DNA of 64,000 nucleotides from NCBI GenBank assembly GCA_024137785.1, contig JAHRHZ010000041.1:5531052-5595051 (forward strand), in the 5' to 3' direction. The translations under genes were made by a program, and so were the position numbers. The notes beneath the pieces are model-generated. The model was not told where the DNA came from. It saw nothing but the letters and a program-made list of their open reading frames with translations, and did not search any database. Below are positions 13,843 through 63,755 of the stretch, piece by piece (the stretch's first letter is position 1; every line of letters starts with the position of its first letter). This DNA is from Ginglymostoma cirratum (lineage: Eukaryota).

Positions 13843-14546
13843 GATAACAAGGTGTAGAGCTGGATGAACACAACAGGCCAGGCAGCATCAGAGGAGCAGG
13901 AAAGCTGACCTTTCGGGTCTGGACTCTTCTTCAGAAATGGGGGAGGGGAAGAGGGCTCTCAAATAAATGGGGGGGGGGGCGGCGGTGATAGAAGGTGGAT
14001 AGTGGAGCGGATAGGATGGGAGAGAAGGCAGACAGGACAAGGAGGTGGGGATGAAGCTAGTAAAGGTGAGTGTAGGTAGGAAGTGGGTGTGGGGGTTGGT
14101 CAGTGAGGTGGGAGGAGCCGAAAGGTGGGAGAGAAGACAGACAGGTCAAGAACGTGGGGGTTAGGGGGGTTCTGGTCTTGGGATGAGGTTGGGGGTGGAG
14201 AGATTTTGAAGCTAGATGCCACCCGGAAACTGGAGGAACAACACCTCATATTCTGCCTTGGAACCTACAACCCAATGGTCTCAATGTAGACTTTAAAACC
14301 CTCTCATCCCCACCTCCTTGACCTGTCCGTCTTCTCTCCCACCTATCTGCTCCACTATCCACCTCCTATCACTGCCCCCCCTCCCTATTTATTTCAGAGC
14401 CCCCTTCCCCTGCCCCATTTCTGAAGAAGGGTCCAAACCCAAAATGTTAGCTTTCCTGCTCCTCTGATGCTGCCTGGCCTGCTGTGTTCATCCAGCTCCA
14501 CACCTTGCTATCTCCGACTCCAGCCATCGGCAGTTCCTACTATCTC
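13843..14546 (+). mobile_element. Penelope-like element (PLE): GIY-YIG C-terminal remnant flanked by inverted pseudo-LTRs
   Basis: 14218-14295 encodes ATRKLEEQHLIFCLGT/LQPNGLNVDF (frameshifted PLE endonuclease end). 13843-14210 is an inverted copy of the 3' UTR. Imperfect flanking duplication CT(G/A)CTCCTGT(G/T)TTT. Confidence 0.85.
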
Positions 14547-18475: not shown

Positions 18476-19899
18476 TAATTTGTATTCATTACAGACTTAC
18501 ATCAGGAATTGCAGTCAGATCATTCGAAGTTGTAACTACTCATACAGTTCAGTAGATGGAGAGAGTATTAGCTTCTGGGAGAAGTTTGCAGTACAATGAT
18601 GTCTTTCACAACCTCCTACATCTTGTGGTCTTATGATTTGTTTACAGGATCTCAACAGCACAGAGTTCAGATGTCACTGCGGAGCTCTTGTGGTGTAGCA
18701 CCCTGCCCTGGAACCAACATCTCTGGGTTCAAGTCTCACTTCAGGACCTGATGTTCAAGGAAGACACATTCACAGCATGGTCAAAGGGTTGAGCATCAAC
18801 ATGCCAATCCTTCCACCACATACCAGTGGTAAGAGTGAGAGAAATTCCAGGAAAGTAAGTTGGAGCCTCTACCATCACTATTATAGCCTGAAGCTCCACC
18901 ATGCATGGAGCCGTGCACATTCTCAGTAACTTCCCAGACACCTGGGATGAGCATCCAGATGGCTGTTGTGGATCCGGTCAATACCAAGAGCAGGAGCCTT
19001 AACCCCCATTCTGGCTCTAGTAGATTTAGGGGTTGGTTCCTTGCCCTACCCTGGTGGAGATCATGACACTGTTGGAGTGGGGGAATTGGGCAGAGAAGAA
19101 GAAGAAGGAAGTGTCTCTGAGATACATTTGTGTTATGAGAAATAAGATGACTCATTTTGCTCTTTGTCCCCCAAATTTTAAACAAAATCTGAACAAGTTG
19201 GACACAGGGATTTTCACTGAAATTTCCTTAATATCATAATCCAGATAGAGCATTTATTAATACAACTTTTATTGACAGGTATTGACATATAACACTTTTA
19301 CAGTTGGATCCAGAAGTTGTGTTGTGCTTTTCATTGCGCTCAGATGGAATTATTTTGTTGAGAACAACTGGAAGTTCAGGAACCAGTCTTGCAGAAGGAA
19401 TTTGAGTCACTCCATGTTGTTTTTCTCTATTCTTTCATGTGTTGTCAGTCTCACTGGCAAGGCCAGCATTTGTTGCTCATCCCTAATTGACCTTGAACTG
19501 AGTGGCATGCTCAGCCCCATTTTAGAGGGTCGTTAAGAGTCAACCACATTGCTGTAGGTCTAGAATCACAAGTAGACCAGACAAGGTGAGGATGGCAGAT
19601 TTCCTTCCCTAAAGAACATCAGTGAACTGGATGGGGTTTTACAACAATTGATGATAATTTCCTAGTCACAATTACTGAGACTGGCTTTATATACCAGAGT
19701 TTATTAACCAAATGTAAATTCTAACAGATGCTGTGGTGGGATTTCATCCACCAATCCCCAAAAATTTTATCCTGGGCCTCAGAATTAATAGCCCAGTGAC
19801 ATTACCCATTATCCACCATCTTCATCAAATCAGAACAATCTGACTTAGTCTGGAAGAATTGTGTTTGTCTTTGCTGTTAACAAGATAATGAACACAGCC

Positions 19900-20028: not shown

Positions 20029-23000
20029 CTGGAGACAGAACAGAGACAAGAAAATGTTAGGTACAAAATATGCAGCAATCATTTACAAATAGCAGGTTAA
20101 TTTTCTGAGCATTCCCAAATGGTTCACCCAGGAACTGTCTCCACAAACCCATAAGACCATAAGACACGGGAGCAAAAATTAGGCCATTCGGCCCATCAAG
20201 TCTGCTCCACCATTCAGTCATGGCTGATAAGTATCTCAGCCCATTTTTCTCCCACCTCCTCCCCATAACCTTAGATAGGTTCCTGATTGTTAGGGGTATC
20301 AACCTCTGTCTTAAATGTACTCAATGACCTGACCTCCACAGTCTTCTGTGGCAGTAAATTCCATAGGTTCATCATTCTCTGGCTGAAGAAGTTTCTCCTT
20401 AAAGCCATTCTAAAAGGTCTTCCTCTTAATTCTAAGGCTGTGCCCTTGGGTCACAAACTCCAAAAATATACAACAAATGAATTTTGAATTGCTAGAGATG
20501 CCAATGGTTTTAGATTGGGAATCCCAGATCTGAGGCAGTGTACTATTATGTGAGAGGATACAGAGATGAGCAACAATAATAGATCCTTTTGTTTGGAATC
20601 TATGCTTTATCAATGATGGTGAATTTTGAGGTAAGAAAGGAAAAAAAAAACTCCCATATAATGTTTGAGATTGTGCGTAAGACCAACAATACTGAACTGG
20701 ACAAATTGTTCACTCTGTCGCATGACTCAAATCTGAACATACTCAAGTGAGAAGTGAGGGACTGATGAATAAGCAGAAAAATCTTTTAGATGTGAATTAA
20801 ATTGAAGCACATGTTGCCAGACTAGCCAAATGGATCAGAAAGCAATCAACCATTCGACTTCAGTTGTACTTCTCAAGAAAGAAAGGTGTTGGGGAATTTG
20901 GTGAGGTGATGGTAACATGGAGGGAGTGATTTGGTGAGTAGATGTGATTGAGAGGAATGGTGGGAATATAAATAAAAATGAGAGATATGGTAGGAAAATG
21001 AATAAGTGGGATTGAGAGATACAGTGGAAAGGTGAGTGGGTGGGATCAAGGGATACAGTAGGAAGGTCAGTGGGTGGGATTGAGGGATACAGTGGGAAGG
21101 TCAGTGAGTGCGATTGAGAGACACAGTGGGAAGGTCAGTGAGTGAGATTGAGGGATACAGTGGGAAGGTTGAGTGGGTGGGATTGAGGGATACTGTAGGA
21201 AGGTGAGTGTATGGGATTGAGGGATACAGTGGAAAATTGAGTGGGTGGAATGGAGAGACACGTTGGGTAGGTTGAATGGATGGGATTGAGGGATACAGCG
21301 GGAAGGTAAGTGGGTGGGATTGAGAGATACAGCGGGAAGGTAAGTGGGTGGGATTGAGAGATACAGTGGGAAGGTAAGTGGGTGGGATTGAGGGATACAG
21401 TGGGGTGGTGAGTGGGTGGGATTGAGATCACTGAGAGAGTGATGAGTCTGTTGGCCACGTTCTGTTACTGGAGCATCTTTACACAATTTGTGTACCCAAT
21501 GGTTGATGGTACTCAAAAATAAATACGACTTGGATAAGCACACGAGATGCCATAAAATACTTGAAGCTATCGACCATTACACCAAGGGTTGGATTAGACT
21601 GAATAGTTTCTCATTGACTGATGCAGAAAAAGATGGTCCAAATGACTTCCTCCTAAGCTGTTAAACCTATTGAGTTTCTCTGAATCACCACTGATTGTGG
21701 ATATCAGTTAGTCACGCAGGCAATGTCATGTCCTGAATTCATTCTCCCAACAATATTACCATTGTTACATAAGTTTCCTCTTCACCGTTCTTTGAGTCCT
21801 TATTTTTCATTTCCTCCTTGGCTTTATTTTGTCTCTCGGTCTGGACTGGGTTTCGGTTGGTCACAGTGACGTAGCGTGCTATTTCCTGATGGTTAGTGAA
21901 CATATTTGTTTAATCAGCTGGAACTGCATCTTCACGTCACCTTCACTTTCTAATTTAAGTCCATCCCCCACTCCTGCAAAACCCTCTTGTGTCTCTGCAA
22001 TGCTGCACGGGTCAAGGTAGTGTGTGGGTGATAACTGCCTGGGCCATGTCCCACAATTGATCTGCTGATTCCAGCTGTGGCAGAATTAGAAAATTGACTC
22101 TCTCACTGTTGGAGAAACATTCTCTCCCATTCCTGCTCCAATATGACCGCATTGAATAGCAGAGCAGGCTCAAAGGGCTGAATGGCCTACTCCTGCTCCT
22201 ATTTTCTATGTTTGTTCACAGGGTTAGCCCTGGGACAGAAGTTGAATGAAGCCTGGAGATATAAAAGTGATGTTTAGCATGTCCCACAATATGCCTATCA
22301 TAATAGGCGTATCATGTTGGGTCGTGTTACTGCGCTGTTAATCTGGATTAGTGCACTAGAGAACTGAGTTTAAAACCCATCATAGCAAATAATTCAAGTA
22401 ACTTAATATATTTGGAATAAATAGATATTTGGCAGTAATAATGACCGTGAAGCTACCAGATTGTGGCAAAGAGCTATCTGGTTCACTTAACCCTCGAAAG
22501 TGGATATTGCCATCGTGACTCAATCTGGCCTCCATGTGACTCCAGACTCACAGTAATGTGGTTGACTCTCAGCTGCCCTCTGAAACAGCCATTCTGTTGA
22601 TCAAACTGCTACAGAGAAGAAGCAATGTGGGTGAAACTACACCATATAGTTCAGGAAGGCAGCTGGCCACCATCTTGATGGACAATAAGCATTGACATCG
22701 CCAATCATGAATGGATTAAAAGTGAAAGCTCTCTCCATCCCTGTCCACTAAAAGCCAAGCCATTTCCTGGGAGAAGCAAGAAGCCAGATTTAAAAACCCA
22801 AGCTGCACTGGGGAGGAATATTTGGGAGACTCTGTTTCCACCCTCCTACACCATGAATTCCTTGAAATACATGTACTTTGTAAGAGGTTATGTCAGCCTG
22901 AGCCACACAGATTCGGTTCCTACTTGAAAGGATTCAGAAAATGGGTGCCAACCCATGAGCCACCGTCTTGATCTAGAGGCTCACTGTACCCTGGTAAAAG

Positions 23001-26000
23001 GACCAGCCCCTAACGTCTAACTTCAGCCCAGCCTCACACAACAAAAAAATTGTGAGTCCTGGTTCTCCCTAATCCACGTAATTGGATCGAACTGTCAACT
23101 CGGACGCAATCCATTCCCCCCGCCCCATTACCGTATACAACCTCAGTCAGATCATTAGGTAAGGGAATCAAAGGAAAAGGCAGGAAAGTGGAGTTGAGGA
23201 TTATCAGATCAGCCATGATCTCGTCGAATGGCTGAGTAGACTCAATGGGCTGAATGGCCTATTTCAGCTCTTGCAACTTCTGATCAATCATCCTTGTATC
23301 TATGCTGGGAAAGTAAGACTTCAGTAAATGCTGCACTCACTGTGAAGAATCCCTGGATGAACTAAGGTGGCTCAGTGGTTAGCCATGCTGCTTCACAGTG
23401 CCAGGGACCTGGGTTTGATTCCACCCTCAGGTGAGAGTATATGTGGAGTTTGCACATTCTCCCTGTGTCTGTGTGGGTTTCCTCTAGGTGTTCTGGTTCC
23501 TTCCCACAGTCCGAAGATGTGCATGTTAGGTGAATTGCCATAGAAAATGCAGGGTTTAGGGGGTTAGGTAGGAGAGTAGGTCTGGGTGGGATACTCTTCA
23601 GGGGGTTGGTGTACATTCAATGGGATGAATGGCCTGCTTCCACACTGGAGGGATTCTATGATCACTGAATCTGTGTTGACTGTAGTTAACATGTTTCAGT
23701 GACTGAGAAAATAAGTGGATATTCAATATTAAAAGTTTACCTAAAATCTGTACATTAAAGTGCCCCTTACCTCTGAATCTTCAAGCCCTCCTGGATATCT
23801 TCTGCTTGTTGATGCAGAGAATAGGGGAGAAAGTTAAAGATTATTCATTGTGTGGAAAGGAAGGTGACAGCTCAACTCATTTAAATTCTTGCTCCTTGAT
23901 ATACGTACCTTTGACTTCTTATTGACCATTTCTTCCATGTGCTTCCAAGGATAAGTGTGACAAAGAAAATGATAACACCTGCTGCTGTCGTATATATGAT
24001 TATATTCTTTGGAACTGCTTCCACTAACATGGATGGTCTTAAGCTCCGTGTACGTTTGGTGTCTGAAGGAAATAGAAATGTTCAGATAAATTTAAATGTA
24101 AAATCTCTGCCTCGTTGCCCAAAGAGGCATTGATATCACGAAGTTAACAAGTCAGTTGTGTTTCAGGAGAATCTCCCCAAAAACTGTCAATTGATTCAAG
24201 CCCTGATCTTGGATTTAAATGAGGAAGCTAGACAAACACATCAGTGTAGTCCAGTCAGAGGCGTGGATGAGATGCTAAACCTCACTGTTTTATTGAATCT
24301 GCCAATGTCTTACTGAAAGCAACTCAACATTTCCATGACCAAGATCGAATCATCAACCAACACGGGATTAATCGGTTGTGATAAATTGGTCATTCTTTGT
24401 GGTATTTTGTGGGCTAAATGTTGGCCATTTTTATCCACATTACATCAGTGACTCTGCTGAAAATTATCCATCACTTGGTGAGCATTTTGGGATGTATAAA
24501 CATAGAACATAGAACATTACAGCGCAGTACAGGCCCTTCGGCCCTCGATGTTGCGCCGACCTGTGAAACCAATCTGAAGCCCATCTAACCTACACTATTC
24601 CATTATCATCCATATGTTTATCCAACGCCCATTTAAATGCCCTTAAAGTTAGCGAGTCTACAACTGTTGCAGGCAGGGCATTCCATGCCCTTACTACTCT
24701 CTGAGTAAAGAATCTACCTCTGACAACTGTCCTATATCTATCACCCCTCAATTTAAAGCTATGTCCCCTTGTGCTAGCCGTCACCATCTGAGGAAAAAGG
24801 CTTTCACTGTCCACCCTATCTAATCCTCTGATCATCGTGTATGTCTCTATTAAGTCACCTCTTAGCCTTCTTCTCTCTAATGAAAACAGCCTCAAGTCCC
24901 TCAGCCTTTCCTCATAAGACCTTCTCTCCATACCAGGCAACATCCTGGTAAATCTCCTCTGCACCCTTTCCAATGCTTCCACATCCTTCCTATAATGCGG
25001 CCACCAGAACTGTACGCAATACTCCAAGTGCGGCCGCACCAGAGTTTTGTACAGCTGCAACATGACCTCACGGCTCCGAAACTCAATCCCTCTACCGATA
25101 AAAGCTAACACACCGTACGCCTTCTTAACAACCCTATCAACCTGGGTGGCAACTTTCAGGGATCTATGCACATGGACACAGAGATCTCTCTGCTCGTCCA
25201 CACTACCAAGAATCTTACCATTAGCCCAGTACTCTGTATTCCTGTTACTCCTTCCAAAGTGAATCACCTCACACTTTTCCGCATTAAACTCCATATGCCA
25301 CCTCTCAGCCCAGCTCTGCAGCTTATCTATGTCCCTCTGTAACCTGCAACATTCTTCCGCACTATCCACAACTCCACCGACCTTAGTGTCATCCACAAAT
25401 TTACTAACCCATCCTTCTATGTCCTCATCCAGGTCATTTATAAAAATGACAAACAGCAGCGGCCCCAAAACAGATCCTTGCAGTACACTAGTAACTGAAC
25501 TCCAGGATGAACATTTCCCATCAACCACCACCCTCTGTCTTCTTACAGCTTGGCAATTCCTGACCCAAAGGACAAACAACAGTAGCACAAGTGCAGGTTC
25601 TTTCTTTTTTTCATTTAATTTTCTGAATATTTAGCAGTCCCGCCAATACAGATTTAGTGATTGCTCCCTCTTTATGGAAAGTTCCATCCATTAGCTGTGT
25701 GTGTCAGAATATGGGGAACGCTCTGCTTCATTTTGCATCCATTAACTTAATTCATGAGGCTATTGTGAACAGGAGGCCACATAGACAGGTTTTACATAAT
25801 TGCCCACCCACATTGTACTATCTCACAACATCGAGATAAACTTTACATAAAACACATATGACGTAAACCCTTTCAATTAATTCCCAGAGGATTGAATTTC
25901 AAATGATCAAACTCATTCCCATTCACAATCAATACACACAATTCCAACTGACAAAATCCCTTCACATTCAATTCCAAGTGTCCACATCTTATCCACTCTC

Positions 26001-29000
26001 TCACCATTCCCAATTTATGGAAGTATATCACCTTAGTTCTTAGACCATAAGATATTGGAGCAGATGTAGGCCATTCAGCCCATCAAGTTATCTCCGCATT
26101 CAATGAGATCATGGCTGATCTGATAATCCTCAACTCCACTTTTCTGCATTTTCCCCTTAACCCTTAATTCCCATACTGATTTAAAATTGATCTATCCCAG
26201 CCTTATATGTATTTAGTAGCACAACCTGTACAACCATAGATTCACATTCCGCTGAGAAAGAAATCCTTTTATCTCACTCTTAAATGGATGATCCCTTGCT
26301 CTGACATTATGCCCTTTGTTCCTAGATTCACCCACAATGTAAACAGCCTCTCTGCATCTTACCCATCTGGTTCACTAATGCCCTTTAGGGAAGGAAACTG
26401 CCATCCTTACCTGGTCTGGCCTACATGTGACTCCAGACCCACAGCAATGTGGTTGACTCTGAACTGCCCTCTGGGCAATTAGGGATGGGCAATAAATGCT
26501 GCCTAGCCAGTGACACACTCATCCCGTGAACGAATAAAGAAAAACTTTCTGCGCTGTGCTTCTTTGTTGGAAAGGTAATTCAGATAGATGTTGTGGATAT
26601 TTTTAAAACCAGTCTTTCTTTTCCACCCTCTCCCCTTTTTATAGAATCAAGTGCAGCGGGAGATAAAATATGCTTTGAAGTCAATGCCATGGATGAGCAT
26701 TCCAACAGTGGCGTTATTCTTTGCAGAGGTCCGAGGTTACAGCAAATTGTACGACTATATCGAGGATTCCCATTATGGTAAATGTTGTTAACAAAACAGG
26801 GAAATGGGAATTCCACATGGGGAAGTGGATTTTGGCCAACATTTCACTTGATTCCCTCACACTGGGCAGCGAGCTGAACCTTGCATTGTTCTTGAAACCT
26901 GAGACCAGGTGACATGGAGCAAGAGTAAGTCATTTTAACCCCTCACATCTGCTCTGTCTTTGTAGTCCATGGCCATAAAAAAACCCTGTCAAGCCCCTTA
27001 AAAATCCTATATTTCAATAAAGTCTCCCTTCATTTTTCTAAACTCCAATGAGTACAAGCCCAACCAACCCAATCTCTCCTCAAAAGAAAATCTCTCCATG
27101 CCCAGAATCAGCCAAGTGAACCTTATCTGGACTGCCTCCAATGCCAGTATATCTTTCCTTAGATAAGGGGCCCAAAATTGTTACAGTATTCCAGAAAACA
27201 AGGTGTGGAGCTGGATGAACACAGCAGGCCAAGCAGCATCATAGGAGCAGGAAAGCAACTATGTTCTGACTTACCTTGGCACAACACTGTTAGATCAATT
27301 CTGCTTCTATAGATGCTGCTGGATGACCTCGGGATCCGCATATCACAAGTGAAGGAACCTCTGTCGCTGCATTCCACTTCAGATATGAGAATGGAGCCAT
27401 TGCCTTGTCCAATGTCACCCATCCACTGCAGTCTCGGGGAGAATACACTGTCCTGCACAATCACACTGAGGTTTTGGTAGTGAAAGAAAATCTGTGTCGG
27501 AATCAACAAAGAAGTTAACTAAAGATTAAGCATAGCATTTGATAGAGCAAAACACCCTTTACATACTCCCCGTCAAACACTCCCAGGCCAGGGACAGTAT
27601 AGGGTTAGATACAGAATAAAGCTGCCTCTACACTGTCCCCATCAAACACTCCCAGGCCAGGTACAGTAAGAGGTTTGTTCAGAGTAGAGCTTTCTCTACA
27701 CAGTCCTTATCAAACTCTCCCAGGGCAGGGATGGCACAAGGTAAGATACAGAGTAAAGCTCCTTCTGCACTGTCCCCATCAAACACCCCCAGGCCAGGCA
27801 CATCACTCAATGGATCTACAATTAAATTAATTGATCTCATTGAAACTAAATTGAAACTGAACTCTAAAGAAGTGCAGATTAGTGACAAGGTTCCAACACC
27901 AGTCACTTCACAATTTCCCCTCAGCTGGAGAGCAGCACAGTTCATTGTACAGTCCTTGGTTAACTGTTTTCTGATGCATTCAATGTGAAAACATCTCTAA
28001 CAAACATATTCCATATACTAACCAATCAACACTCTCTTGTTGGCCATTATTGATTGTTGTAGCCTTTGAGAATTGGTACTCTTGTGATTCTATCCTGATT
28101 TTAGTGCAAGACAAGAAACTTTGATAAAATGCAATACACAGCCCATTATCTTAATGACGTCAGGGATGGTTTCTATGGAAGTGGAACGATGTCTGCAAAA
28201 TGAGCTGAGAAATCAAACCTCACTTGCAGAAACCTGTTTCAATTACAGGATAAAATAAGTTAGGCCAAACAAGTTCACTAACTAAAGTGTGTCAATGATA
28301 GTGGGCTGAGGCAACATGAACTGACAGAGAAGGCTGTTATGGGTGGTATCACTGCATAGTCTCTGATTGATGGTAGTGGTCTTGTTACTCTTAGGATCAT
28401 AGAGTCCCTACACTCTGCCCATCAGGTCCACACTGACCCCCCCACAAAGAGCACCTCACCCAGACCCACCCCACCCCAGTAACCCTGCACCTCCCATAGC
28501 TAATCCACTTAACCTGTACAGTATAGGACAATTTAGCATGGCCAATCCACTTAATCTGCACATCTTTGGAATGTGGGAGGAAATCAGCACACCCAGCAGA
28601 ACCTCACACAGACACGGGGAGAATGGGCAAACTCCACACAGAGACAGTCACCTGAGGGTAGGATTGAACCTGGGTCCTTAGTACTGTGAGGCAGCAGTGC
28701 TAACCACTGAGCTACCATACCACCCACTTCTCTGGTCTTGCCTGGTCATCCAGCACATTACTATCGAGAAACAGCTGTGAGGAAGGGTCACCGGACCCGA
28801 AACGTTAACTCTGTTTTTTCCTTCACAGATGCTGCCAGACCTGCTGAGCTTTTCCAGCAACTTCTGTTTTTGTTCCTGATTTACAGCATCCACAGTTCTT
28901 TTGGTTTTAATTACTATCAGAAGTTGGTTAGCTCAGTTGGCTAGTTGGCTGGTTGGCTGGTTGGTGATGCAGAATGATACCAACAGCATGCGTTTGATTC

Positions 29001-32000
29001 CTGTATTGGCTGGGTTACCATGAAGGACTCTCCTCCACAATCTCTTCCCGTAGTCTGAGGTACACTGATCCTCATGTCAAACCACCACCAGCTGTGTGTC
29101 TCTCTAATGAAAGAGTGGGGCTACAGTGGCTTTACTTTCACTGTTAATTCAGTTATAGCTGTTCACAGTAAATCTGAAAGAGTGGAAACACTCTGTCTGT
29201 AACTTACTGAAACTATTGTGAACTCTGTGTTGCTGAAATGCTGTGATGTGACAGTGAATGAACATCGGTGTAGTCTTTTTGAGAGGGAACATAATTAGAG
29301 CAATCACCCAGTGATTTATGCTTGTTTAGAATGTGCTTTGGTGCACAGTTTCTGCAGATTCTGTGTAAAATTTCCCAGGGATTGCTGAAAGCTCTGGATG
29401 ACAACATCGCTGCCCTAAATGGTAACAGCTGTTGCCACATTTGATTGAAAGACAAGTTATAAACCATGTTGGTAAAATGCAGCCACTGAGATCGACAGAG
29501 AGCTCTGGAGCACATCACTCACCAAGACCTCCTCGGTATCACTGTCAGGGCTGTGCAACCATTCCAATTTGATGTTGTGCTGTTGAACATCAGTTTGGTA
29601 TTCGAGTTTGCAGTCCAAACGTAACTCCATTCCCTCCTCTACAACCAAGGATTTCGGGGTAGAGATACCAATCGCTAACGTGGAGCAGATACCTGAAGGA
29701 TAGAAACCAACACCCAATACCCATTGATGGGTAGAAGCCTCAGTACCTGGGCTGACAGGCAGTGGATTGATTCCCACTTTTGGTGACGTTACACTAGCTA
29801 TCCTTTAGGCTGTACATAAACTACACAGACACCTTTGAGTCAGAGAGACATACAGCACAGAAACAGGTCCTTTGGTCCAATTCATCCATCCTGACCAGAC
29901 ATCCTAATCTGAGCTGGTCCTTTTTACCAGCATTTGGCCTGTATTCATGTACCCATTCAGATACCTTTTAAATGTTATAATTGTACCCGCCTCCACACTT
30001 GCCCTGGCAGCTCGTTCCATACATACGCTAATCTCTGCATGAAAATGTTACACTTCAGGTCCTTTTTAAATCTTTCCCCTCTCACCTTAACCCTATTTGA
30101 GTAGATTCCAGACCATAAATCTCTCCTGGGTATCCGTTATTCTATGTATAAACCATAGAAACTCCACAATTAGATTCAAGGCTGGAAATCTCTCTTGGGT
30201 ACAAATCCCTGAACCCTGTGATTAGATTCCAGACTATCACTCTCTGCTGCATATCTGTCATTCAATGTATAAACCACACAACCTTCTTGATTAGATTTCA
30301 GTCTCTAACATGCTCCCGGGTATATACTGTCCCCAACGTAAACTGTCTGGACCCTGCAAATACATTCCAGCCTGTATGACACAAATTATAGTATCTGTTT
30401 CTGAGCACAAACCGTAACAGTTATTAGCCACGAATATATTCATTAGCATTAATTACAGCCAAGGAGGTGATAACTATGAAGCTCAGTAACCACATTTGCA
30501 CAATATATGACAAAGAGCAGTGGTCACGAATCTGCTCCCTGGAAACATGACTGCAGACATCCATTGGTCTGTAAATCAACCACTAATCACTGCCTTTAAC
30601 TTTTCTAACAAGTCTATGGTGTTGCCCTTTATCAAACAGCATTTCCAATGCCACCCCTCTCATCAATCCTTCGACTTATGTTGTCAAAGAATTCAGTCAA
30701 ACTCATGATTTACCTCGGCTGGTGTTTATTTATTATTTTAATAAATGAAAGCTAGTTGACGTTGTCCCTGCCAGCAATATTTATTTTAAAAAGATCCCGC
30801 AGACCTTCCTGCACAGAGTAAGAGAAGTTTGCATAAAAGAATCCAAGTTGCAAAACCTGAGCCAAAGCCACAAAGCTACCCGATTTACTATACCGTATGA
30901 GATGTGGAAACCCTGTCAAGGCAGAGCCCGTCTTTAGTACCACCGGCCAGAATAATCGAGCTTCATTTAGGGTTAAATTGCTTCACGATATTAAAACTAT
31001 CGCGAATTGAAGTCAGCTGGGTGCAAAAAGGGGAACTGTGGGTATGCATACGATTGCCAGGCAAGGTGGTGAACCTTCAGGCCTGGCTTCCTCTTTCCAT
31101 CAAAATTAATGCTCTCCTGTGCAGCAAAGCAACTGCGTCGGACATTTCAATGATGCTCCTTCAGTGTGAGTCTCAGCAAAGAGACAGCTGGGATCATATC
31201 TATCAGCGTCTGTACAGAACCTGGACAGATCGTACAAAGGATACGATTTGTGGAACTCAGCAAAGATCTTAAAAACCTTGCATCCAAGCCATGATATCTT
31301 TGTCTCATTAGAGTTTAGGAGAGAAAGCTGTCCCAGGAGAAGTGGAATGGGTTTGTAGTCTGTGCAGTTTACAAGAAGGAGGTGATGCCATTGAAGTATA
31401 AGTTTAGATGGGACTTTCCTGCCTAAAAGTAACAGGAAAGGTGGTGGATGGGCGATTACTGTGGTGAGTTGATGCCAACAAGCTACCTGCCCCTACCCTC
31501 CAATGTTTTGGGGGTAGTTTCATGGGCAACCTTTCTGACCCTGACCAATTGAGGCCTTTAAAGGGTTAATTAATGGCATCTTTAAGGGCCTCAAACTGCC
31601 CAATCAACTTTGTCTCAACAGGAGAGAAAAATGGCAATCTTCTCACTTGTTACAATGAGGTAGATCACCAGCTGCAGTTGGGGGTGGGGCGTGAGGGAGT
31701 GGGGAGGTGGTGGGAGGGGGTTGGGGGGTTGGGGGCGGGGGACAGGCAATCAAGACATAAATGAAGGTCAAAGGGTTACAGCTTAAAGCCATCAATGGTC
31801 CCAGTCCTTTGTGCTGCTGCTCGGCCAGACAGGCAGAGACTTAATTGGGCAAGACATCACTGGAGATGGTGGGGGTGGGGGGGATGGGTATCTCTCAATC
31901 CTAGAGGTACTCGCTCTCACAGTTGGTATTAAAAAATGGAAAGTTCTGGCCATAACATTCTTAGGGATAAGGCGGTTGCTATAGGGAGTTGCTGTGAGAC

Positions 32001-34237
32001 TGTCTTCCCATTAGCTGGAGAATCTAGTTGAGGGTAGGGCAAAGGCCATTTAGCCACTGAGCTGAGGAGAAATGCCTCAAGTCAAAAGGAATATGGATCC
32101 TTGGAATTCTCTATCGCAGAGAACCGTGGAGTCTATATTCAGGATCAGGATGAATAGAGTTCTGGGTACTGAGGCAACCAAAGAATATGAGGTTAGAGTT
32201 AGAAAGTGGAATTGAGATAAAAGATAAAATCTCATTGAATGGAGGAACAAGTTCAATGGGCTGAACGGCCAATTCCTGCTCCAATTTCTTATTGTCTTGT
32301 GTATGAGGTGACTCAGTAGAGGTGTTTAAAGTTATGAAAGGAAGAAACAGAGTAGACAGAAACAGAGGGTCTTTTTCTAACATAATTTCACTGGTGGAAA
32401 TTCCAGAGAATGGGAAGGAATGTCCAACATTGTTTGTTGACTTTAATGAAGAGTAAACTCAGGCATAGTCTAAAATCAGCATTGATCCCAATGCCTTTAA
32501 TTTCCCTATGGTGGGTCCTAATTACCCCCAGAGTGTTTCCAGTGATTGAGGGGTCTTGAATGAAAAGATATCAATGTGAGATTAAATGAAAGAGATTTAG
32601 AAAAAGACAGCAGGAAAATATCTCTCAATTGTTATTCGAGGCAGTTGTGACAGTGTAAATTTCACTAACAAAAATAACAATTGAAACGAAAACAGTGTTT
32701 ATATTTAAAAATACAAATACTGGAGGACTGGAGGATAGGGAGCTAATGTATAGGGAAATAGGACACAGAACAGTGGGTAACAACGTTACCTCAGTATGGC
32801 TACAAGTTGTGGGTTCAAGTCCCACTCACGATTTGAACACAAATGTTGTGGCTGACATTTCGGTGCAGTATGAGGGAGTGCCGCAATGTAGGAGGTGCTG
32901 TTTTTCAGATGATTTGTTAAAATGAGACCCCAATGGACCTGGAAGATTCCAAAGAAGAGTAGAGGTGCTCTTCTCAGTGTCATGGTCAATATTTATCCCT
33001 CAACCAACATCAATAAAAAGATTGTTATCGAATTGCTCAGAGATAGTAAGAACTGCCAATGCTGGAGTCAGAGATAACACAGTGTGGAGCTGGAAGAACA
33101 CAGCAGGCCAGGCAGCATCAGAGGAGCAGGAAAGCTGACATTTTGGGTCAAGACCCTTCTTCAGAAATGAGGAAGAATTCTGAAAAAGGGTCCCAACCCG
33201 AAACATCAGCTTCCTTGCTCCTCTGATGCAGCCTGACCTGCTGTGTTGCTCCAGCTCCACACTGTGTTATCAAATTGCTGTTTGTGGGAGATTGCTGTGT
33301 GTAAATTGACTTCAGTGTTTCCAATTTGACAACATCAGCTATGGTTAAAAATACTTCTTTGGTTGCAGAGCATCTGGGATGTTCTCAGGTCATGAAAACT
33401 GCCACAGAAATATAAGAGATAACAAGGTGCAGAGCTGGATGAACACAGCAGGCCAAGCAGCATGATAGGAGCAGGAAAGCTTGACGTTTTGGGCCTAGAC
33501 CCTTCATCAGAAATGGGGGAGGGGAAGAGGTTTCTGAAATAAATAGGGAGAGAGGCGGAGGCGGATCTTTTACCTCTGTGCCTCCTTTTGTCAATACTGA
33601 CCCTTCAAAACTGGGTCTTCCTGGATTTATGAGGTTCCATATCACACTTAGCTAGGTCTTCCCACCTTCCCATTCATCTCTGTCTTCAAAACCTAACGGT
33701 ACCCTCATCAAAAACAGAAATTTCCAGGGAAACTGAGTAGGTCTGGCACATCTGTGGAGAAAGAGACAGTTAATGTTTCAAGTTCAGAACCAGTTAACTG
33801 TACTTTCTCTCCACAGATACCACCAGACCTGTTGAATTCCTGTTTTTATTTCAGGTTTTCAAAATCCAAGGTGCTTTGTTTTAATTTAGTGCACTGGAAA
33901 TCCATCTCTGCTTGCAGCTATGAAAATGGCTCACCAATTCAGCCTAATCTGAGCTGCTGGTCCCACTGTTCAACTCATTAAGCCCATACTTATAAAGATT
34001 CTATGCAGCTGAATGGACCGATGATGACTGTTGGGTGGGGTTTGGTGTTTAGAGGTGGGTGAACCATATATCAAAACCTCCAAGAATGTAAAAGACCACA
34101 GTCAGCAATCCCAGCCCCAATTACAGCTGTGAATCAGAACCCTCTGCCTAATTCGGGCCATTTTTCCATCAGTGTTTCCAATAAACAAAGCACTTACCAC
34201 AGAATATGAGAGATGACAGGAGCAAGAGGAGATCCAT
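19900..34237 (-). CDS. JAML: Junctional adhesion molecule-like (JAML/AMICA1-like) type I Ig receptor, join(34237-34198,29692-29523,27491-27275,24062-23909,23801-23771,21885-21760,20028-19900), 867 nt, 288 aa
   Basis: Spliced product: MDLLLLLSSLIFCG|ICSTLAIGISTPKSLVVEEGMELRLDCKLEY...KLEWLHSPDSDTEEVL|IFFHYQNLSV...PRLQWMGDIGQGNGSILISEVECSDRGSFTCDMR...DLTVLCQ|DTKRTRSLRPSMLVEAVPKNIIIYTTAAGVIIFFVTLILGSTWKKWSIRSQR|RYPGGLEDSE|EIARYVTV...EEETYVTM|RSILQ...HWKF*. All junctions are GT-AG with consistent phases. The V domain resembles JAML (YYSNLSV, RVHLMGD..NDGS), and YVTM parallels the JAML YMTM motif. Confidence 0.82.
20147..20460 (-). mobile_element. CR1 3' end in the last JAML-like intron
   Basis: (CCATAAGA)n tail and GGCCATTCGGCCCATCAAGTCTGCTCCACCATTCA. 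Confidence 0.8.
21008..21428 (+). repeat. 34-bp G-rich minisatellite (GGGATTGAGGGATACAGTGGGAAGGTGAGTGGGT), ~12 copies
   Basis: Direct tandem periodicity. Confidence 0.9.
21760..21885 (-). CDS. JAML: JAML-like cytoplasmic exon with YVTV and YVTM motifs
   Basis: Branch point CACTAAC then CATCAG|GAA ATA...; ends TAT GTA ACA ATG|GTAATA. Confidence 0.8.
23365..23662 (+). mobile_element. HE1/V-SINE
   Basis: Head, V domain and GATTCTATGA tail. Confidence 0.88.
23771..23801 (-). CDS. JAML: JAML-like 31-nt cytoplasmic exon
   Basis: Phase 2-to-0 exon needed to join the TM exon to the next exon; AAGCAG|A AGA TAT...GAG|GTAAGG. Confidence 0.7.
23909..24062 (-). CDS. JAML: JAML-like transmembrane exon
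   Basis: TTCCTTCAG|AC ACC...; IIIYTTAAGVIIFFVTLILG followed by WKKW; donor AG|GTACGT. Confidence 0.86.
24500..25550 (-). mobile_element. Young 5'-truncated CR1 LINE with an uninterrupted ORF2 C-terminus
   Basis: ORF 24590-25588: [58 protein letters not shown]; (CATAGAA)n tail; CpGs retained. Confidence 0.95.
26361..26545 (+). mobile_element. 5'-truncated SINE directly preceding the captured SC5D segment
   Basis: Same family as 975-1338; tail CATCCCGTGAACGAATAAAGAAAAA. Confidence 0.85.
26546..26973 (+). pseudogene. SC5D: Inverted duplicate of SC5D 44122-44549 (intron + 133-nt exon at 26645-26777 + intron) inside a JAML-like intron
   Basis: 428 bp, 4 substitutions by manual comparison and none in the exon. 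AG/GT splice sites are intact on the + strand. Confidence 0.95.
27275..27491 (-). CDS. JAML: JAML-like Ig V domain, second half
   Basis: ACAG|ATT TTC...; RLQWMGD..NGSILI..DRGSFTC (DxGxY/FxC motif); donor G|GTAAGT. Confidence 0.9.
27560..27800 (-). repeat. Inverted array of the ~67-bp minisatellite
   Basis: CTGTCCCCATCAAACACTCCCAGG...GATACAGAGTAAAGCT units. Confidence 0.8.
28395..28720 (-). mobile_element. HE1/V-SINE
   Basis: Antisense head and V domain. Confidence 0.85.
28925..29140 (+). mobile_element. tRNA-derived SINE of a further family; related copies at 38335-38500(-) and 57000-57190(-)
   Basis: TAGCTCAGTTGG head and AAACCACCACCAG...CTCTAATGA.AGAG core. Confidence 0.6.
29523..29692 (-). 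CDS. JAML: JAML-like Ig V domain, first half
   Basis: TTCAG|GT ATC...; B-strand Cys (LRLDC) and C-strand Trp (KLEW); donor TTG|GTGAGT. Confidence 0.88.
29838..30095 (-). mobile_element. CR1 3' end
   Basis: Same subfamily as 2069-2510. Confidence 0.75.
30100..30380 (+). repeat. Degenerate ~50-70-bp tandem repeat (ATTAGATTCCAG...TATAAACC)
   Basis: TAGATTCCAG-like words recur about five times. Confidence 0.6.
32780..33415 (+). mobile_element. DeuSINE interrupted by a PLE hairpin (33038-33271)
   Basis: tRNA head GGGTTCAAGTCCCACTC, GAGGGAGTGCCGCA, AATATTTATCCCTCAACCAACATC. Confidence 0.75.
33038..33271 (-). mobile_element. PLE-derived hairpin mini-element
   Basis: Inverted arms; TGTTATC(G/A)AATTGCT duplicated at 33023 and 33265. 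Confidence 0.85.
34198..34237 (-). CDS. JAML: JAML-like signal-peptide exon (exon starts at 34252)
   Basis: CCATAG|GTGAGGAACAGTGAA ATG GAT CTC CTC TTG CTC CTG...TGT G|GTAAGT; hydrophobic MDLLLLLSSLIFC; phase 1 matches the next exon. Confidence 0.8.
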
Positions 34238-42143: not shown

Positions 42144-42590
42144 TCATTCCTCTTTGCTGACATTTTCAGTGGCTGCCTGGCCATTGGAAGGAGAGCTACA
42201 CAGCTTTCCCTCGGCTGTCAACTTTCTCAGGTAGTCATGTGGTCCTTTGCCTTCGAAGGCAGATGGGCACTTGTAGGAGCCTCCAATTCTGTCCCAGAGC
42301 GTAAAATATTGTCCATAATTGTAGTCAAAGTACAGGTGGTGGTCAGTGTGATGGGCTGCACCGTTGATGACCTCCTCAAGGATCTTAGGCACTCTGTAAT
42401 TCCCATCGTGAATGGACACTGTCCAGATGTTGACGAAGATGTAAAGACCCAGGTAGACCAGCTTGTGCAGCGGGAACAGGAATGGATAGATATGATATGG
42501 GATACTCTGCAGGAAGCCATCAATAGGATGAAAAGCGTGACTTGCGAATGGGGTTGCAATCTTCCAGGTATGGTGGGGCTTGTGTAAGCG
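42144..42590 (-). CDS. SC5D: SC5D last coding exon (447 nt incl. TGA)
   Basis: TGCAG|CGC TTA CAC AAG CCC CAC CAT = RLHKPHH...; continues in the ORF-track frame [10 protein letters not shown]...HHTDHH...SKEE*. An AATAAA lies on the minus strand at 42006-42011. Confidence 0.96.
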
Positions 42591-45500
42591 CTGCAGACAA
42601 GAGAGGAATTACATATCAGCATATTAGCGATCACTTGAAACTAAAAATAAAGGCACACAGTTCTAAAAAACAAAACCAAAGGATTTTAAATATCAACCAT
42701 ATTATGATAACACCAAGAAACATGGGACTTGAACATGCATCATCTGGCCCAGAAGCATGGACATTTGACTGATGCTATAAGATTTCTTCAGGAAACAATT
42801 CTATTTACTGAAGATGCTCTTCAGTCATGATCTGGCCCTCATGATGTCAGATGTCCATCAGCATCCAGAACCAGGGCTAGATGCAATAATAAGAAACATC
42901 AGCATTTTAAAATAAATTTATGAAGTGGAAATAAGGTTAGTCGTAGATTTCTGACACATTCCTTTCAGGTAATGCAATCAACATTAACTTTCAAAGGGGA
43001 AACTGAATAATATTAGAGGAGAAATTTAGAGGAAAGACCGGAGTGGGTCTAATGAAGAGCTGCTTCAGTGGGGTGCAAGGTCTCCTTCTGACCTATCCAA
43101 TATCGTCATCAATGCTAGCATGTCTGATTAGCCCCCTTTCGTTGAAGCAGGTATCTAATCGTGACAAATAAAATCTAAACCCCATTTTCAAATCTCTGAA
43201 TAATCTGTGTATGAAAGCCGTACTGCCTTGTAACTCTAACACTTACCTTATAGAGGAGCCTGTGGTGAAGAAACCGATGGATCCAGTAAATACACATGTC
43301 CGTGAAGAACAGAAAGGAGACCATACTGAAGATTACTCCAAACCAACCTGATTAAACAGGAAGACAAAATCATAGGGTGGTAGTTTCCTCAGTATACAAT
43401 CACAGACATTAGCCACCTATTCCAGTTCATCATACACACATGGCTCTAAGCATCACAGTCACAAGCCATAACCTTGAGGATTTTGGGGGAAAAAGTGCCG
43501 GGGGGGGGGGGGGGGCCCCCCTTGTAGAACTCACACCACATGGCACAAACAAAGCAAAGCAGGAGTTAATACCTAAGGAGTACACTTACTGCTCTTTCCC
43601 TGCCCTGCCGTTATTTGAAAAGTGGCTTTTTCCTTGGCCCACTTTACTCAGACAGAATTTCCAGAAATAATAGCTACATTTATACGGCACCTTTAAAATA
43701 GTGGAACATCCCAAGGTCCTTCACATGCAGGTTATCGTACAAACCTTATATTAGGCCACACATGGATACAGGGCAGGTGATCCAATGTTGGGAGGGAGAG
43801 AAGAAAAGAAAGGAAAATGGAAAAAAGGAAAATGGAAAAAAGGAAAATGGAAAAAAGGAAAATGGAAAAAAGGAAAATGGAAAAAAGGAAANNNNNNNNN
43901 NAAATGGAAAAAAGGAAAATGGAAAAAAGGAAAATGGAAAAAAGGAAAGAAAAGCTGAAACTGTTTGGAGGGGGAATGCTTCATCCTAGGCAACCAATTG
44001 AAACTAGAACTCAGGAACCTACAATAGTGGAACCAATGGCAGGAACAGGGAATGGGATTACAACTTGTTCCATACAACTAAGATATTTCCAAAGCAACAT
44101 GTTCATCAGATTCTCAAATCAGCCATGGACTACAAAGACAGAGCAGATGGGAGGGGTTAAAATGACTTACTCTTGCTCCATGTCACCTGGTCTCAGGTTT
44201 CAAGAACAATGCAAGGTTCAGCTCGCTGCCCAGTGTGAGGGAATCAAGTGAAATATTGGCCAAAATCCACTTCCCCATGTGGAGTTCCCATTTCCCTGTT
44301 TTGTTAACAACATTTACCATAATGGGAATCCTCGATATAGTCGTACAATTTGCTGTAACCTCGGACCTCTGCAAAGAATAACGCCACTGTTGGAATGCTC
44401 ATCCATGGCATTGACTTCAAAGCATATTTTATCTCCCGCTGCACTTGATTCTATAAAAAGGGGAGGGGGTGGAAAAGAAAGACTGGTTTTAAAAATATCC
44501 ACAACATCTATCTGAATTACCTTTCCAACAAAGAAGCACAGCGCAGAAATGTTTTCTTTATTCATTCATGGGATGAGGGCATCGTTGGCCAGGCAGCATT
44601 TATTGCCCATCCCTAATTGCCCAGAGGTCAGTAAGGATGACAGTTTCCTTCCCTAAAGGACACTAGTGAACCAGGTGGGTTTTCCCGACAAATCGACAAT
44701 GGATTCATGGTCATCATTAAATTCTTAATTGCAGATATTTATTGAATTCAAATTCCACCATCTACCATGGCAGGATTCGAACCTGGGTCCCCCAAAGTTA
44801 TGTGAGTCTCTGGATTAAGAGTCCAGCGATAATAAGGTCATTTGGTGCAGTATACCTGAGCCAGTTTCTAACAGGTTATAGCTACTGGGCTGTCAAAACC
44901 ACACCTCAGTCATTAAGACCTCTCATTCTAAGACAGCAGCCAGAGGCAAGTTGTTCTGCAGAGGTAGCACAGAGAAATAAAGAATAGAAAGTGAAATAAT
45001 AAGTAATTATGAAATATGAACATAAAATAGTGACTTATAAGCCAAAAAAAAATTAGCATTTCAAAATTTAAAATAAAATCCCATTTGCTGGTCTGAGCAA
45101 GCGTTGTCAAAACAATTTTAAAAACACCCAAGGATTCTATTTTTCCATCAAGCACTGACTCAGGAACTCACACCATTTCCTCCACATGAATGATAGAAAT
45201 ACATGATGCAGAGTATAATATAGTGGTTGCATATACAACACAACAGATATTCCATCTGATGAGTCAACGCAATAGGACATTTCACAAGAATGTCAAGAAG
45301 CCTTTAATTCCATTGCTTTTAAAATGGCCTTGCTGGGACCTTGCTGTGTACTTACACAGGAAAGATTTGCAGGATTGTCAGCATAAAAAAAAAGGTGGTG
45401 TGGTGGTCGAGACTAATTGTTTGTTTATAGGGTTTTTAAAAGAGCTAGCCAATTAAATGAACTGAGAGACGCAGAGACGTCAGGGATATAGCACATACCG

Positions 45501-46533: not shown

Positions 46534-46733
46534 GAGATAACAAGGTGTAAGGCTGGATGAACACAGCAGGCCAAGCAGCATCAGAGGAGCAGGAAAGCTG
46601 ACGTTTCAGAAGAAGGGTCTAGGCCCGAAACGTCAGCTTTCCTACTCCTCTGATGCTGCTTGGCCTGCTGTGTTCATCCAGCCTTACACCTTGTTATCTC
46701 AGATTCTCCAGCATCTGCAGTTCCTACTATCTC
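46534..46733 (+). mobile_element. PLE-derived hairpin mini-element in SC5D intron 1
   Basis: Near-perfect ~73-bp inverted arms plus a 3' tail; 14-bp TSD AAGATTTTAAAATA at 46520-46533 and 46738-46751. Confidence 0.9.
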
Positions 46734-63565: not shown

Positions 63566-63755
63566 AGATAGTAGGAACTGCCAATGCTGGAGAATCTGAG
63601 ATAAACGTTGTGGAGCTGGATGAACACAGCAGGCTAAGCAGCATCAGAGGAGCAGGAAAGTTGACGTTTTGGGTCGAGACCCTTCTTCACCGAAACGTCA
63701 ACTTTCCTGCTCCTCTGATGCTGCTTGGCCTGCTGTGTTCATTCAGCTCCACAAC
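63566..63755 (-). mobile_element. PLE-derived hairpin nested in an older PLE (63490-64000, minus)
   Basis: 13-bp TSD GTTAATGTTTCAG at 63553-63565 and 63756-63768. Confidence 0.88.

What the first reader, a model, noticed from the sequence alone, without database searches (positions are those of the whole stretch)
26361..26986. SC5D coding exon captured, inverted, into a JAML intron behind a SINE
Seen: 26546-26973 is a 428-bp reverse-complement copy of 44122-44549. It has 4 substitutions, none in the 133-nt SC5D exon, and intact splice sites. The insert reads SINE 3' half + SC5D intron/exon/intron + CATAAAAAAA, is bounded by ACCC...ACCC, and splits a CR1. The donor locus has a SINE of the same family at exactly the same junction, and both share the AATGCTGCCT variant. 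However, the two SINE parts differ by roughly 10% plus a 54-bp indel, against ~1% in the unique part. Inference: either SINE 3' transduction with later divergence or conversion, or SINE-tail-primed templated copying (template switch or ectopic repair) from the paralogous SINE 17 kb away. Either would be an exon-shuffling intermediate.
Basis: partly seen in the sequence, partly recalled or inferred. Interest (0 to 1): 0.8.

Follow-up and report, generated by a model that had tools for sequence, protein, structure and literature searches.

The report
Old inverted SC5D exon copy beside SINE
A 428-base piece of the sterol gene SC5D (one exon with its intron flanks) was copied backwards next to a SINE repeat in an intron of a neighbouring immune-receptor gene 17 kb away. 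The copy is real and old and seems to be kept like its source by gene conversion, but it lies antisense to its host gene, so it is a curiosity of DNA repair, not a step towards a new gene.

Summary
26546-26973 (+) is a reverse-complement copy of 44122-44549. It has 4 substitutions, none in the 133-nt SC5D exon (26645-26777). A 5'-truncated SINE (26361-26545) precedes it and CATAAAAAAA follows. The insert sits cleanly in a LINE remnant, with only ACCC repeated.

The SINE parts differ by 11.5% plus a 54-nt indel, against 0.93% in the unique part (p=3e-7). The best change point is exactly at the SINE end.

New here:
- Contigs of a related species from three studies carry the right junction, and the 428-nt block lies at about twice flank depth. 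The insert is therefore no assembly artefact, has two copies, and predates that split.
- Both copies in that species seem to share 9 or more states that differ from both window copies. This suggests gene conversion, so 99% identity does not date the event.
- The host JAML-like gene is on the minus strand, so the exon copy is antisense in its V-TM intron. No transcript of the copy was seen.
- Five T-runs and no poly(A) signal argue against Pol III SINE transduction.

Best reading (about 0.4): a resident SINE paired with the SC5D-intron SINE and DNA synthesis over-copied 428 nt. A one-step 613-nt copy with later conversion (about 0.3) is not excluded. Exon shuffling is not supported. Interest is modest.

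The parts
26361..26545 (+). 5'-truncated 3' half (185 nt) of a tRNA-derived SINE. It ends in the family's usual ...GAATAAAGAAAAAC terminus.
   Evidence: Aligns to SINE copies at 974-1157(-), 19419-19635(-) and the donor SINE. The SINE core lies at enormous read depth.
26546..26644 (+). Copy of the SC5D intron 3' end, with polypyrimidine tract and AG acceptor.
   Evidence: Identical to 44451-44549(-) except 26629 T/C.
26645..26777 (+). Copy of a 133-nt SC5D coding exon, identical to the source exon.
   Evidence: Frame-1 translation [44 protein letters not shown] is read. A spliced mRNA contig of the window's species covers 26644-26779 with 0 differences (record 14).
26778..26973 (+). Copy of the SC5D intron 5' end, starting at the GT donor. 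Homology ends at 26973.
   Evidence: 3 substitutions against 44122-44317(-).
26974..26983 (+). CATAAAAAAA: untemplated filler, a short A-tail, or the remainder of a SINE tail (compare ...AATAAAAAAAAC of the copy at 974).
   Evidence: Absent from the donor and from related LINE copies. The same letters occur in organism A's junction contigs. No nearby template was found.
26983..26986 (+). ACCC, repeating 26361-26364. It is either a 4-nt target-site duplication or microhomology, since the SINE consensus itself reads AAACCC(A/G)TCTGG.
26040..27192 (-). Host repeat: decayed 3' part of a LINE ORF2 (KGLDRV region), split by the insert at 26360/26987 with no target loss.
   Evidence: Collinear with 11349-11870(-) and 55630-56131(+) across the insertion point. 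The motif is shared with the RT ORF at 24593-25630(-).
44122..44549 (-). Source segment in SC5D: intron, exon (44318-44450), intron.
   Evidence: A pre-mRNA contig with the three donor-specific letters then runs on into unlike sequence (record 15).
44551..44845 (-). Near full-length SINE of the same subfamily in the SC5D intron. It ends ...GAATAAAGAAAAC one base before the source segment and lacks the 54 nt found in the copy's SINE.
42147..43351 (-). Downstream SC5D exons with the His boxes [13 protein letters not shown] and HHTDHH; the last exon ends at the stop near 42147.
   Evidence: Motif scan. Pfam FA_hydroxylase E=1.2e-19 for 42147-42608 and E=0.0065 for 43178-43351.
27275..27492 (-). 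Second half of the V-set Ig exon of the JAML-like host gene. It is the exon just upstream (in gene sense) of the intron that holds the insert.
   Evidence: Pfam V-set E=1.6e-8. Best solved-structure match is JAML 3mj6, E=3.4e-12. An mRNA contig covers it with 0 differences (record 16).
23884..24081 (-). Open segment holding the transmembrane stretch of the JAML-like gene; it is the next exon downstream of the insert. A YVTM cytoplasmic segment lies at 21742-21909(-).
   Evidence: Hydropathy and motif scan.

Best explanation
This is a genuine, two-copy, pre-speciation, local inverted insertional duplicate. It is not a mobile repeat and not an assembly error.

Proposed origin (inferred):
1. A 5'-truncated SINE already lay in a LINE remnant in the V-TM intron of the JAML-like gene.
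2. A break in or at its A-rich 3' tail was repaired by pairing that SINE, in register, with the homeologous SINE (about 89% identical) in the SC5D intron, 17 kb away and in opposite orientation.
3. DNA synthesis ran off the end of the SINE for 428 nt, through SC5D intron, exon and intron.
4. The new end was released and joined to the other broken end. That end still carried the rest of the tail (C+ATAAAAAAA) and the intact target.

Since then, non-allelic gene conversion with SC5D has kept the 428 nt at least 99% alike. The SINE parts were never alike and stay outside the conversion domain. The exon copy is antisense to its host gene and has no demonstrated function.

Shown: the anatomy, the identity step, two copies, presence in a related species, the strands and the host intron. 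Inferred: the resident SINE, the break, the priming and the conversion.
For: - The copy and source are collinear without any indel across the SINE end (511 nt ungapped). The identity step maps to 26546, with 2-lnL interval 26546-26562.
- The copy's SINE keeps 54 nt that the donor SINE lacks.
- SINE distances form a star tree with no branch joining copy and donor.
- CpG decay: 5 of 8 lineage-sites have decayed in the SINE tail against 0 of 14 in the unique part, p=0.002.
- The source lies 17 kb away and inverted. DNA-templated repair or replication switching favours such nearby templates (reviewed in PMC9199198). RNA-mediated insertion lands 'seemingly at random' (PMC5110952).
- The target is intact, with only a 4-nt repeat and a 10-nt A-rich insert that resembles this SINE family's tail.
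- The right junction is present in three independent samples of a related species. The 428-nt contig lies at 2.0x, 2.1x and 1.7x flank depth and carries at least 9 shared differences from both window copies. Hence there are two copies, old, evolving in concert.
- If the SINE parts had started identical, the same conversion should have homogenised them too. Yet the left 83 nt show 11 differences against 1 in the right 83 nt (p=0.005).
Against: - Both SINE parts share a 1-nt deletion (GCTG-CCT) that four other in-window copies lack. This is what common descent would give, unless it marks a subfamily.
- Copy-donor is still the closest SINE pair (89.2%).
- The adjacent AC/CA difference at 26544-26545 is not predicted by priming with a proofreading polymerase.
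- With CpG sites removed, the left-edge against right-edge contrast is weak (6/83 vs 1/83, p=0.12).
- No SINE-only allele has been seen.
- The evidence for concerted evolution rests on contigs and their depths, not on phased reads.
Confidence: 0.4

Rival explanations
1. One-step copy of 613 nt. The 3' 185 nt of the SC5D-intron SINE and the following 428 nt were copied together. The route was either a replicative template switch or DNA patch with ACCC microhomology, or reverse transcription of unspliced SC5D pre-mRNA, which runs in the same sense as the SINE. The piece was inserted at a staggered break. Later the donor SINE lost 54 nt, both SINE parts diverged, and gene conversion kept only the unique part alike.
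For: - The shared 1-nt deletion in both SINE parts.
- A clean single insertion with a 4-nt repeat and an intact target.
- SINE-part divergence of 10.8-11.5% fits an event somewhat older than the species split, whose flank divergence is 4-8%.
- Conversion explains the low divergence of the unique part.
- Half of the differences in the SINE tail are at CpG sites.
Against: - It needs conversion to stop within 0-16 nt of the SINE end, although the sequences would have started identical there.
- The donor SINE must have been almost mutation-free when copied, because the tree is a star.
- The left and right edges of the block behave differently (11/83 vs 1/83).
- The RNA version adds the improbability of landing 17 kb from the source, and it lacks a poly(A) signal.
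Confidence: 0.3
2. Chimeric retrocopy. During target-primed reverse transcription, the LINE enzyme copied a stretch of SC5D pre-mRNA and then jumped to a free SINE RNA at or near the intronic SINE's tail. The result is a SINE part of foreign origin fused to the SC5D piece.
For: 5' truncation, an A-rich 3' end and a short repeat at the target. The SINE part ends in the complete family terminus GAAAAAC. The SINE and SC5D run in the same sense, so the pre-mRNA contains both.
Against: - It needs two or three template jumps, one of them exactly at the SINE end without copying any of the intronic SINE's tail.
- There is no poly(A) signal, and only 7 A.
- The target CTTACCC/TGTC is not T-rich.
- The 17-kb proximity is unexplained.
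Confidence: 0.1
3. Classical SINE 3' transduction. The SC5D-intron SINE was transcribed from its own Pol III promoter, read through 428 nt and retrotransposed. The SINE parts diverged or were converted afterwards.
For: A same-family SINE sits at the same junction at the donor. The 1-nt deletion is shared. The donor SINE is near full length with a tRNA-like head.
Against: - Five T>=4 runs lie in the 428 nt, the first a T5 at +55. By established knowledge these terminate Pol III.
- There is no poly(A) signal before the tail.
- SINE identity is 89% against 99% for the transduced part.
- The copy has 54 nt that the source lacks.
- The copy lies 17 kb from its source.
Confidence: 0.05
4. Assembly artefact or collapsed repeat: the copy does not exist in the animal.
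For: The SINE and LINE flanks are high-copy, and the window's own species had only RNA runs available.
Against: Single-copy-depth contigs from three independent studies of a related species bridge 26941-27058, with at least 33 nt on each side of the right junction. One contig reaches 28 nt across the left junction. The 428-nt block lies at about 2x depth, not at high-copy depth.
Confidence: 0.02

Closest known systems
Repeat-homology-mediated template switching or synthesis-dependent repair (Alu/Alu-mediated rearrangements, FoSTeS/MMBIR, SDSA with over-copying; review PMC9199198)
   Same: Two homeologous SINEs lie a few kb apart, and the junction sits at the repeat. The new segment is copied rather than moved, and it is nearby and inverted. 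Microhomology and a short inserted stretch mark the other junction.
   Different: The switch lies at the very 3' end of the SINE, so no obviously hybrid SINE results. The product is a small 428-nt insertion, not a kb-to-Mb CNV. A resident SINE-only state is inferred, not observed.
Templated sequence insertions (TSIP class 1 and class 2; Onozawa & Aplan, PMC5110952)
   Same: A few hundred bases of transcribed, partly intronic sequence are inserted elsewhere while the donor stays intact. As in class 2, the junctions show microhomology and untemplated letters, with no long TSD, no poly(A) signal and no TTTT/A target.
   Different: TSIP donors map to distant, apparently random regions; here the donor is 17 kb away in cis and a shared SINE marks the junction. 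The class 1 hallmarks (TSD of at least 5 bp, 10-40 A, AATAAA 10-20 nt upstream) were tested and not met.
LINE-1 / SVA 3' transduction and transduction-driven exon shuffling (hallmarks as summarised in PMC13141329; the classic cases are from my own knowledge)
   Same: An element followed by its donor-locus 3' flank appears at a new site with an A-rich end. An exon is carried along.
   Different: Those elements are Pol II-transcribed, use a downstream poly(A) signal, and give offspring as similar to the source as the flank is. This is a Pol III SINE with internal terminators in the flank, a dissimilar SINE part, and an exon placed antisense.
Concerted evolution of inverted duplicates by non-allelic gene conversion (established knowledge: palindrome arms, small segmental duplications)
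   Same: The paralogs within a species are more alike (0.9%) than the orthologs between species (2.5%). The arms are inverted, 17 kb apart, and have more than 400 nt of near-identity.
   Different: The block is very short. One arm contains a selected exon and the other is intronic junk. The conversion domain appears to end at a SINE boundary.

Membership tests
Retrotransposon 3' transduction | A source element lies immediately upstream of the transduced flank at the donor locus, in the same orientation. | tested here: met
   The donor SINE ends one base before 44549 in the same sense.
Retrotransposon 3' transduction | The offspring element descends from the source element, so its divergence is comparable to that of the flank. 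| tested here: not met
   11.5% against 0.93%, p=3e-7. There is a 54-nt indel and a star-like SINE tree.
Retrotransposon 3' transduction | The read-through transcript is feasible and ends at a poly(A) signal followed by a poly(A) tail. | tested here: not met
   Five T>=4 runs (Pol III terminators), no AATAAA/ATTAAA in the 428 nt, and a tail of only 7 A after CAT.
Retrotransposon 3' transduction | A target-site duplication typical of the mobilising LINE. | tested here: inconclusive
   Only ACCC (4 nt), which may be microhomology with the SINE. Other in-window copies of this SINE show no clear TSD either.
Class 2 templated sequence insertion / DSB patch | The donor stays intact. The junctions show microhomology or untemplated letters, with no long TSD, no poly(A) signal and no L1 target motif. 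| tested here: met
   criteria from PMC5110952.
Class 2 templated sequence insertion / DSB patch | The template is reverse-transcribed RNA from a distant locus. | not testable with these tools
   The piece is unspliced and lies 17 kb from its donor. RNA and DNA templates cannot be told apart from the sequence.
SINE-homology-primed templated copying | Homeologous repeats lie at acceptor and donor, and the junction is collinear at the repeat. | tested here: met
   511-nt ungapped alignment; change point 26546.
SINE-homology-primed templated copying | The acceptor repeat predates the copied segment (a SINE-only ancestral allele). | not testable with these tools
   The related species already has the full right junction, and no older outgroup was available. 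Indirect evidence: a star-like SINE tree against a shared 1-nt deletion.
Concerted evolution by gene conversion | Paralogs within a species are more alike than orthologs between species, with species-specific states shared by both paralogs. | tested here: met
   4 paralog differences against 11 ortholog differences plus a 3-nt indel. Organism A's block lies at about 2x depth with no alternative contig at 9 of those sites in three samples. This is contig-level evidence only.
Exon shuffling / exonisation | The captured exon lies in the sense orientation in the host intron and is spliced into host transcripts. | tested here: not met
   The host V, TM and YVTM exons are on the minus strand and the exon copy is on the plus strand. 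RNA contigs show only SC5D-derived forms.

The most novel reading that the evidence does not exclude
SINE-to-SINE homology-primed over-copying could be a recurrent way in which shark genomes move short unique segments, exons included, between neighbouring genes. This copy might then be kept at least 99% identical to its source for a reason: inside the JAML-like pre-mRNA it provides a 428-nt (133-nt exonic) perfect antisense to SC5D transcripts, a built-in double-stranded RNA link between the two neighbours.
Probability: 0.05. Interest if true: 0.65.

Novelty: new member of a known kind. Interest (0 to 1): 0.33.

Why it matters
It is a clean, small, fully resolved example of how a dispersed repeat can steer DNA repair to copy a neighbouring gene's exon into another gene. 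It also shows how gene conversion can then make an old duplicate look young. That is a caution for dating duplicates and 'transductions' by identity alone.

It offers no evidence of a new gene or a new mechanism. The exon sits antisense in an intron with no sign of use.

Tried and rejected
- Rfam scan of the whole window: no match, so the SINE is not a curated RNA family.
- Search for a nearby template for the CATAAAAAAA filler: only chance-level matches.
- Search for TSDs of other in-window SINE copies, to learn the family's habit: none were clear.
- A shared CTCATCCC variant as evidence of sisterhood: rejected, because other copies (974-1157 and 36796) have it too.
- CpG hypermutability alone as the cause of the identity step: rejected, because all 7 CpGs of the unique part are intact in both copies.
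- Edge effect of conversion alone: the two edges differ (11/83 vs 1/83), though only weakly once CpG sites are removed.
- Fetching orthologous loci from other sharks: no tool route. I therefore made no large protein search.
- Earlier scan notes: word searches for similar SINE-plus-flank events found nothing.
Full report
**Observation**

An independent repeat search finds inverted arms 26463-26973 and 44122-44632: 511 nt, ungapped, 97%.
- 26546-26973 matches 44549-44122 with four substitutions: 26629 T/C, 26811 T/C, 26840 C/T and 26945 A/C (copy/donor).
- None falls in the 133-nt exon 26645-26777, and the AG and GT splice sites are intact.
- The window holds no third copy.

Upstream, 26361-26545 is the 3' 185 nt of a tRNA-derived SINE. 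Other copies lie at 974-1330(-), 19419-19806(-) and in the SC5D intron at 44551-44845(-). The two SINE parts differ at 15 of 131 aligned positions. The copy also holds 54 nt (26409-26462) that the donor SINE lacks.

The contrast with the unique part (4/428) gives Fisher p=3e-7. The maximum-likelihood change point is 26546, the first base after the SINE, with a 2-lnL interval of 26546-26562.

**Insertion site**

Two related copies of the host repeat (11349-11870 minus, 55630-56131 plus) run straight through the insertion point. The insert therefore split …GCATCTT|ACCC|TGTCAAG… with no loss of target sequence. On the minus strand that repeat encodes the KGLDRV region found near the C-terminus of the RT-bearing ORF at 24593-25630 (Pfam RVT_1). 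It is a decayed LINE 3' part, so 'splits a CR1' is essentially right.

The only duplicated letters are ACCC. The SINE consensus itself reads AAACCC(A/G)TCTGG, so this may be 4-nt microhomology rather than a TSD. After the copied block come ten letters, CATAAAAAAA, that are in neither the donor nor the target. They resemble this family's own tail; all six A-runs examined, this one included, are followed by C, for example AATAAAAAAAAC at 974. The window offers no nearby template for them.

**Genes and strands**

SC5D is on the minus strand.
- The source exon is 44318-44450.
- The next exon carries WIHRFLHH (within 43178-43351).
- The last exon carries HKPHH and HHTDHH and ends near 42147. Pfam FA_hydroxylase gives E=1.2e-19.

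The copy is therefore outside SC5D. The host gene is also on the minus strand.
- V-set Ig exon halves lie near 29460-29804 and at 27275-27492. Pfam V-set gives E=1.6e-8, and the best solved-structure match is JAML 3mj6, E=3.4e-12.
- A transmembrane segment lies at 23884-24081 and a YVTM segment at 21742-21909.

The insert thus lies in the V-TM intron, and the SC5D exon copy on the plus strand is antisense to its host. I searched exons one by one by reference and built no joined (spliced) model.

**Reads**

No DNA run of the window's own species was on offer. 'Organism B' runs are RNA.
- In X14, a spliced SC5D contig covers 26644-26779 with 0 differences.
- An intron-retaining contig covers 26750-26973 with exactly the donor letters and then runs on into unlike sequence.
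- A JAML-like mRNA contig covers 27275-27492 with 0 differences.
- Nothing specific to the copy is seen.

'Organism A' is a related species, sampled here in three studies. Its contigs differ from the window by 7.4-7.8% left of the insert, by 4.5% at 27039-27149 and by 2.1% at 27262-27500.
- All three samples have a single-copy-depth contig bridging 26941-27058/9, that is, SC5D-derived letters, CATAAAAAAA and the LINE flank, with 1-3 differences.
- One contig reaches 28 nt across the left junction (26108-26388).
- The 428-nt block is one contig at 2.0x, 2.1x and 1.7x the depth of the flanks.

So the structure is not an assembly artefact. It is present in two copies, not many, and it predates the split of the two species.

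**Concerted evolution**

Organism A's block differs from the window's copy at 11 positions plus a GGA insertion. At nine of these, both window paralogs agree with each other. In all three A samples no alternative contig exists at those nine sites, and depth is doubled. The paralogs inside each species are therefore more alike (0.9% in the window) than the orthologs between species (2.5%), although the duplication is older than the split. Even ignoring depth, 4 paralog differences against at least 11 expected gives P=0.015.

The simplest reading is non-allelic gene conversion between the inverted arms. This rests on contigs, so I rate it likely, not proven. Its consequence is that the ~1% divergence of the unique part does not date the event.

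**Mechanism**

*Pol III read-through from the donor SINE is unlikely.* The 428 nt contain five T>=4 runs on the SINE-sense strand, the first a T5 at +55. They contain no AATAAA or ATTAAA, and the tail is only seven A. That T-runs terminate Pol III is established knowledge.

*Any trans RNA route must also explain the landing site.* The copy sits 17 kb from its source, whereas RNA-templated insertions map 'seemingly at random' (PMC5110952). DNA-templated repair or replication switching, by contrast, uses nearby templates and often inverts them (PMC9199198).

Two DNA-level models remain.

*(a) Resident-SINE model.* A SINE already at the site paired in register with the SC5D-intron SINE. Synthesis over-ran the SINE end by 428 nt, and the end was rejoined to the remaining tail. 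This model explains:
- the step in identity at the SINE end;
- the 54-nt difference;
- the star-like SINE distances (copy-donor 89.2%, copy-c1017 88.0%; four-point sums 30.6/30.6/30.7);
- the CpG contrast (5 of 8 against 0 of 14 lineage-sites, p=0.002);
- the tail-like CATAAAAAAA;
- why conversion, which homogenises the unique part, never included the SINE.

*(b) One-step model.* All 613 nt were copied from a then-young donor SINE, and conversion was later confined to the unique part. Three points favour it:
- the two SINE parts share a 1-nt deletion (GCTG-CCT) that four other in-window copies and the read-derived consensus lack;
- the insertion is clean and single;
- once CpG sites are removed, the left-edge against right-edge contrast is weak (p=0.12).

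I put (a) at about 0.4, (b) at about 0.3, an RT template-jump chimera at about 0.1, classical SINE transduction at about 0.05 and artefact at about 0.02. The adjacent AC/CA difference at 26544-26545 is not predicted by any model without an extra tandem mutation.

**Comparison with known kinds**

The closest kinds are repeat-homology-mediated template switching or SDSA over-copying, and class 2 templated sequence insertions. It fails the defining tests of 3' transduction (descent of the element, a feasible read-through, a poly(A) signal) and of exon shuffling (sense orientation, splicing). I file it as a new member of a known kind.

**Limits and compliance**
- The N run at 43892-43901 was left as it is.
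- Read laying was given 1,601 letters.
- Some rows of its difference table were hidden, so the state of organism A at 26531 and 26544-26545 is unknown.
- Species names are coded, so no divergence time is given.

**Verdict**

New findings are the pre-speciation age, the two-copy status, probable concerted evolution and the antisense placement. Interest is modest.

Noticed in passing
window 25900-27149 against organism A contigs: Between-species divergence is very uneven. It is 7.4-7.8% in the LINE remnant left of the insert, 2.5% in the 428-nt block, 0-2 differences in the 85 nt right of the insert, and 4.5% further right. Conversion with the selected SC5D copy might explain the block, but not the right flank.
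   Followed up: partly
window 27193-27256, with more than 15 further copies (e.g. 14450-14513, 33072-33135, 33417-33480, 46535-46598, 51539-51602, 63609-63660): A 64-nt unit at 90-96% identity recurs on both strands, often as close inverted pairs (e.g. 46534-46607 / 46627-46700, 99% complementary). One copy abuts the LINE remnant just right of the insert, where read depth is enormous. It is probably the hairpin mini-element of scan note s1-879917.
   Followed up: no
window 24593-25630 (-): A 346-aa open segment with an RVT_1 reverse-transcriptase match (E=5.5e-11) and the C-terminal KGLDRV-type region. It is a fairly well preserved LINE ORF2 fragment in the same JAML-like intron.
   Followed up: partly
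window 27567-27802; similar arrays near 200-530 and 4380-4970: A 69-nt tandem repeat, 3.4 copies at 75% identity. Related arrays occur elsewhere in the window on the opposite strand.
   Followed up: no
window 43809-43948 (SC5D intron, just downstream of the source segment in gene sense): A 15-nt minisatellite (AAAGGAAAATGGAAA, about 9.5 copies) interrupted by the assembly gap N10 at 43892-43901. The gap was left untouched.
   Followed up: no
window 19419-19806(-), 36784-37009(+), 22460-22680(+) against 974-1330(-), 26361-26545(+), 44551-44845(-): The SINE has two subtypes in the window. One carries an extra stretch of about 35 nt before GGGCAATTAGGGATGGGCAATAAATG, and the other, which includes both SINEs of this finding, lacks it. 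All copies end A(n)C.
   Followed up: partly
donor locus 44536-44551 and downstream (-): On the SC5D sense strand, the intronic SINE's AATAAA is followed within 7 nt by CA and then a GU/U-rich stretch (TTTCTGCGCTGTGCTTCTTTGTTGG). This looks like a possible cryptic intronic poly(A) site placed exactly at the copy's left boundary. It was not tested.
   Followed up: no
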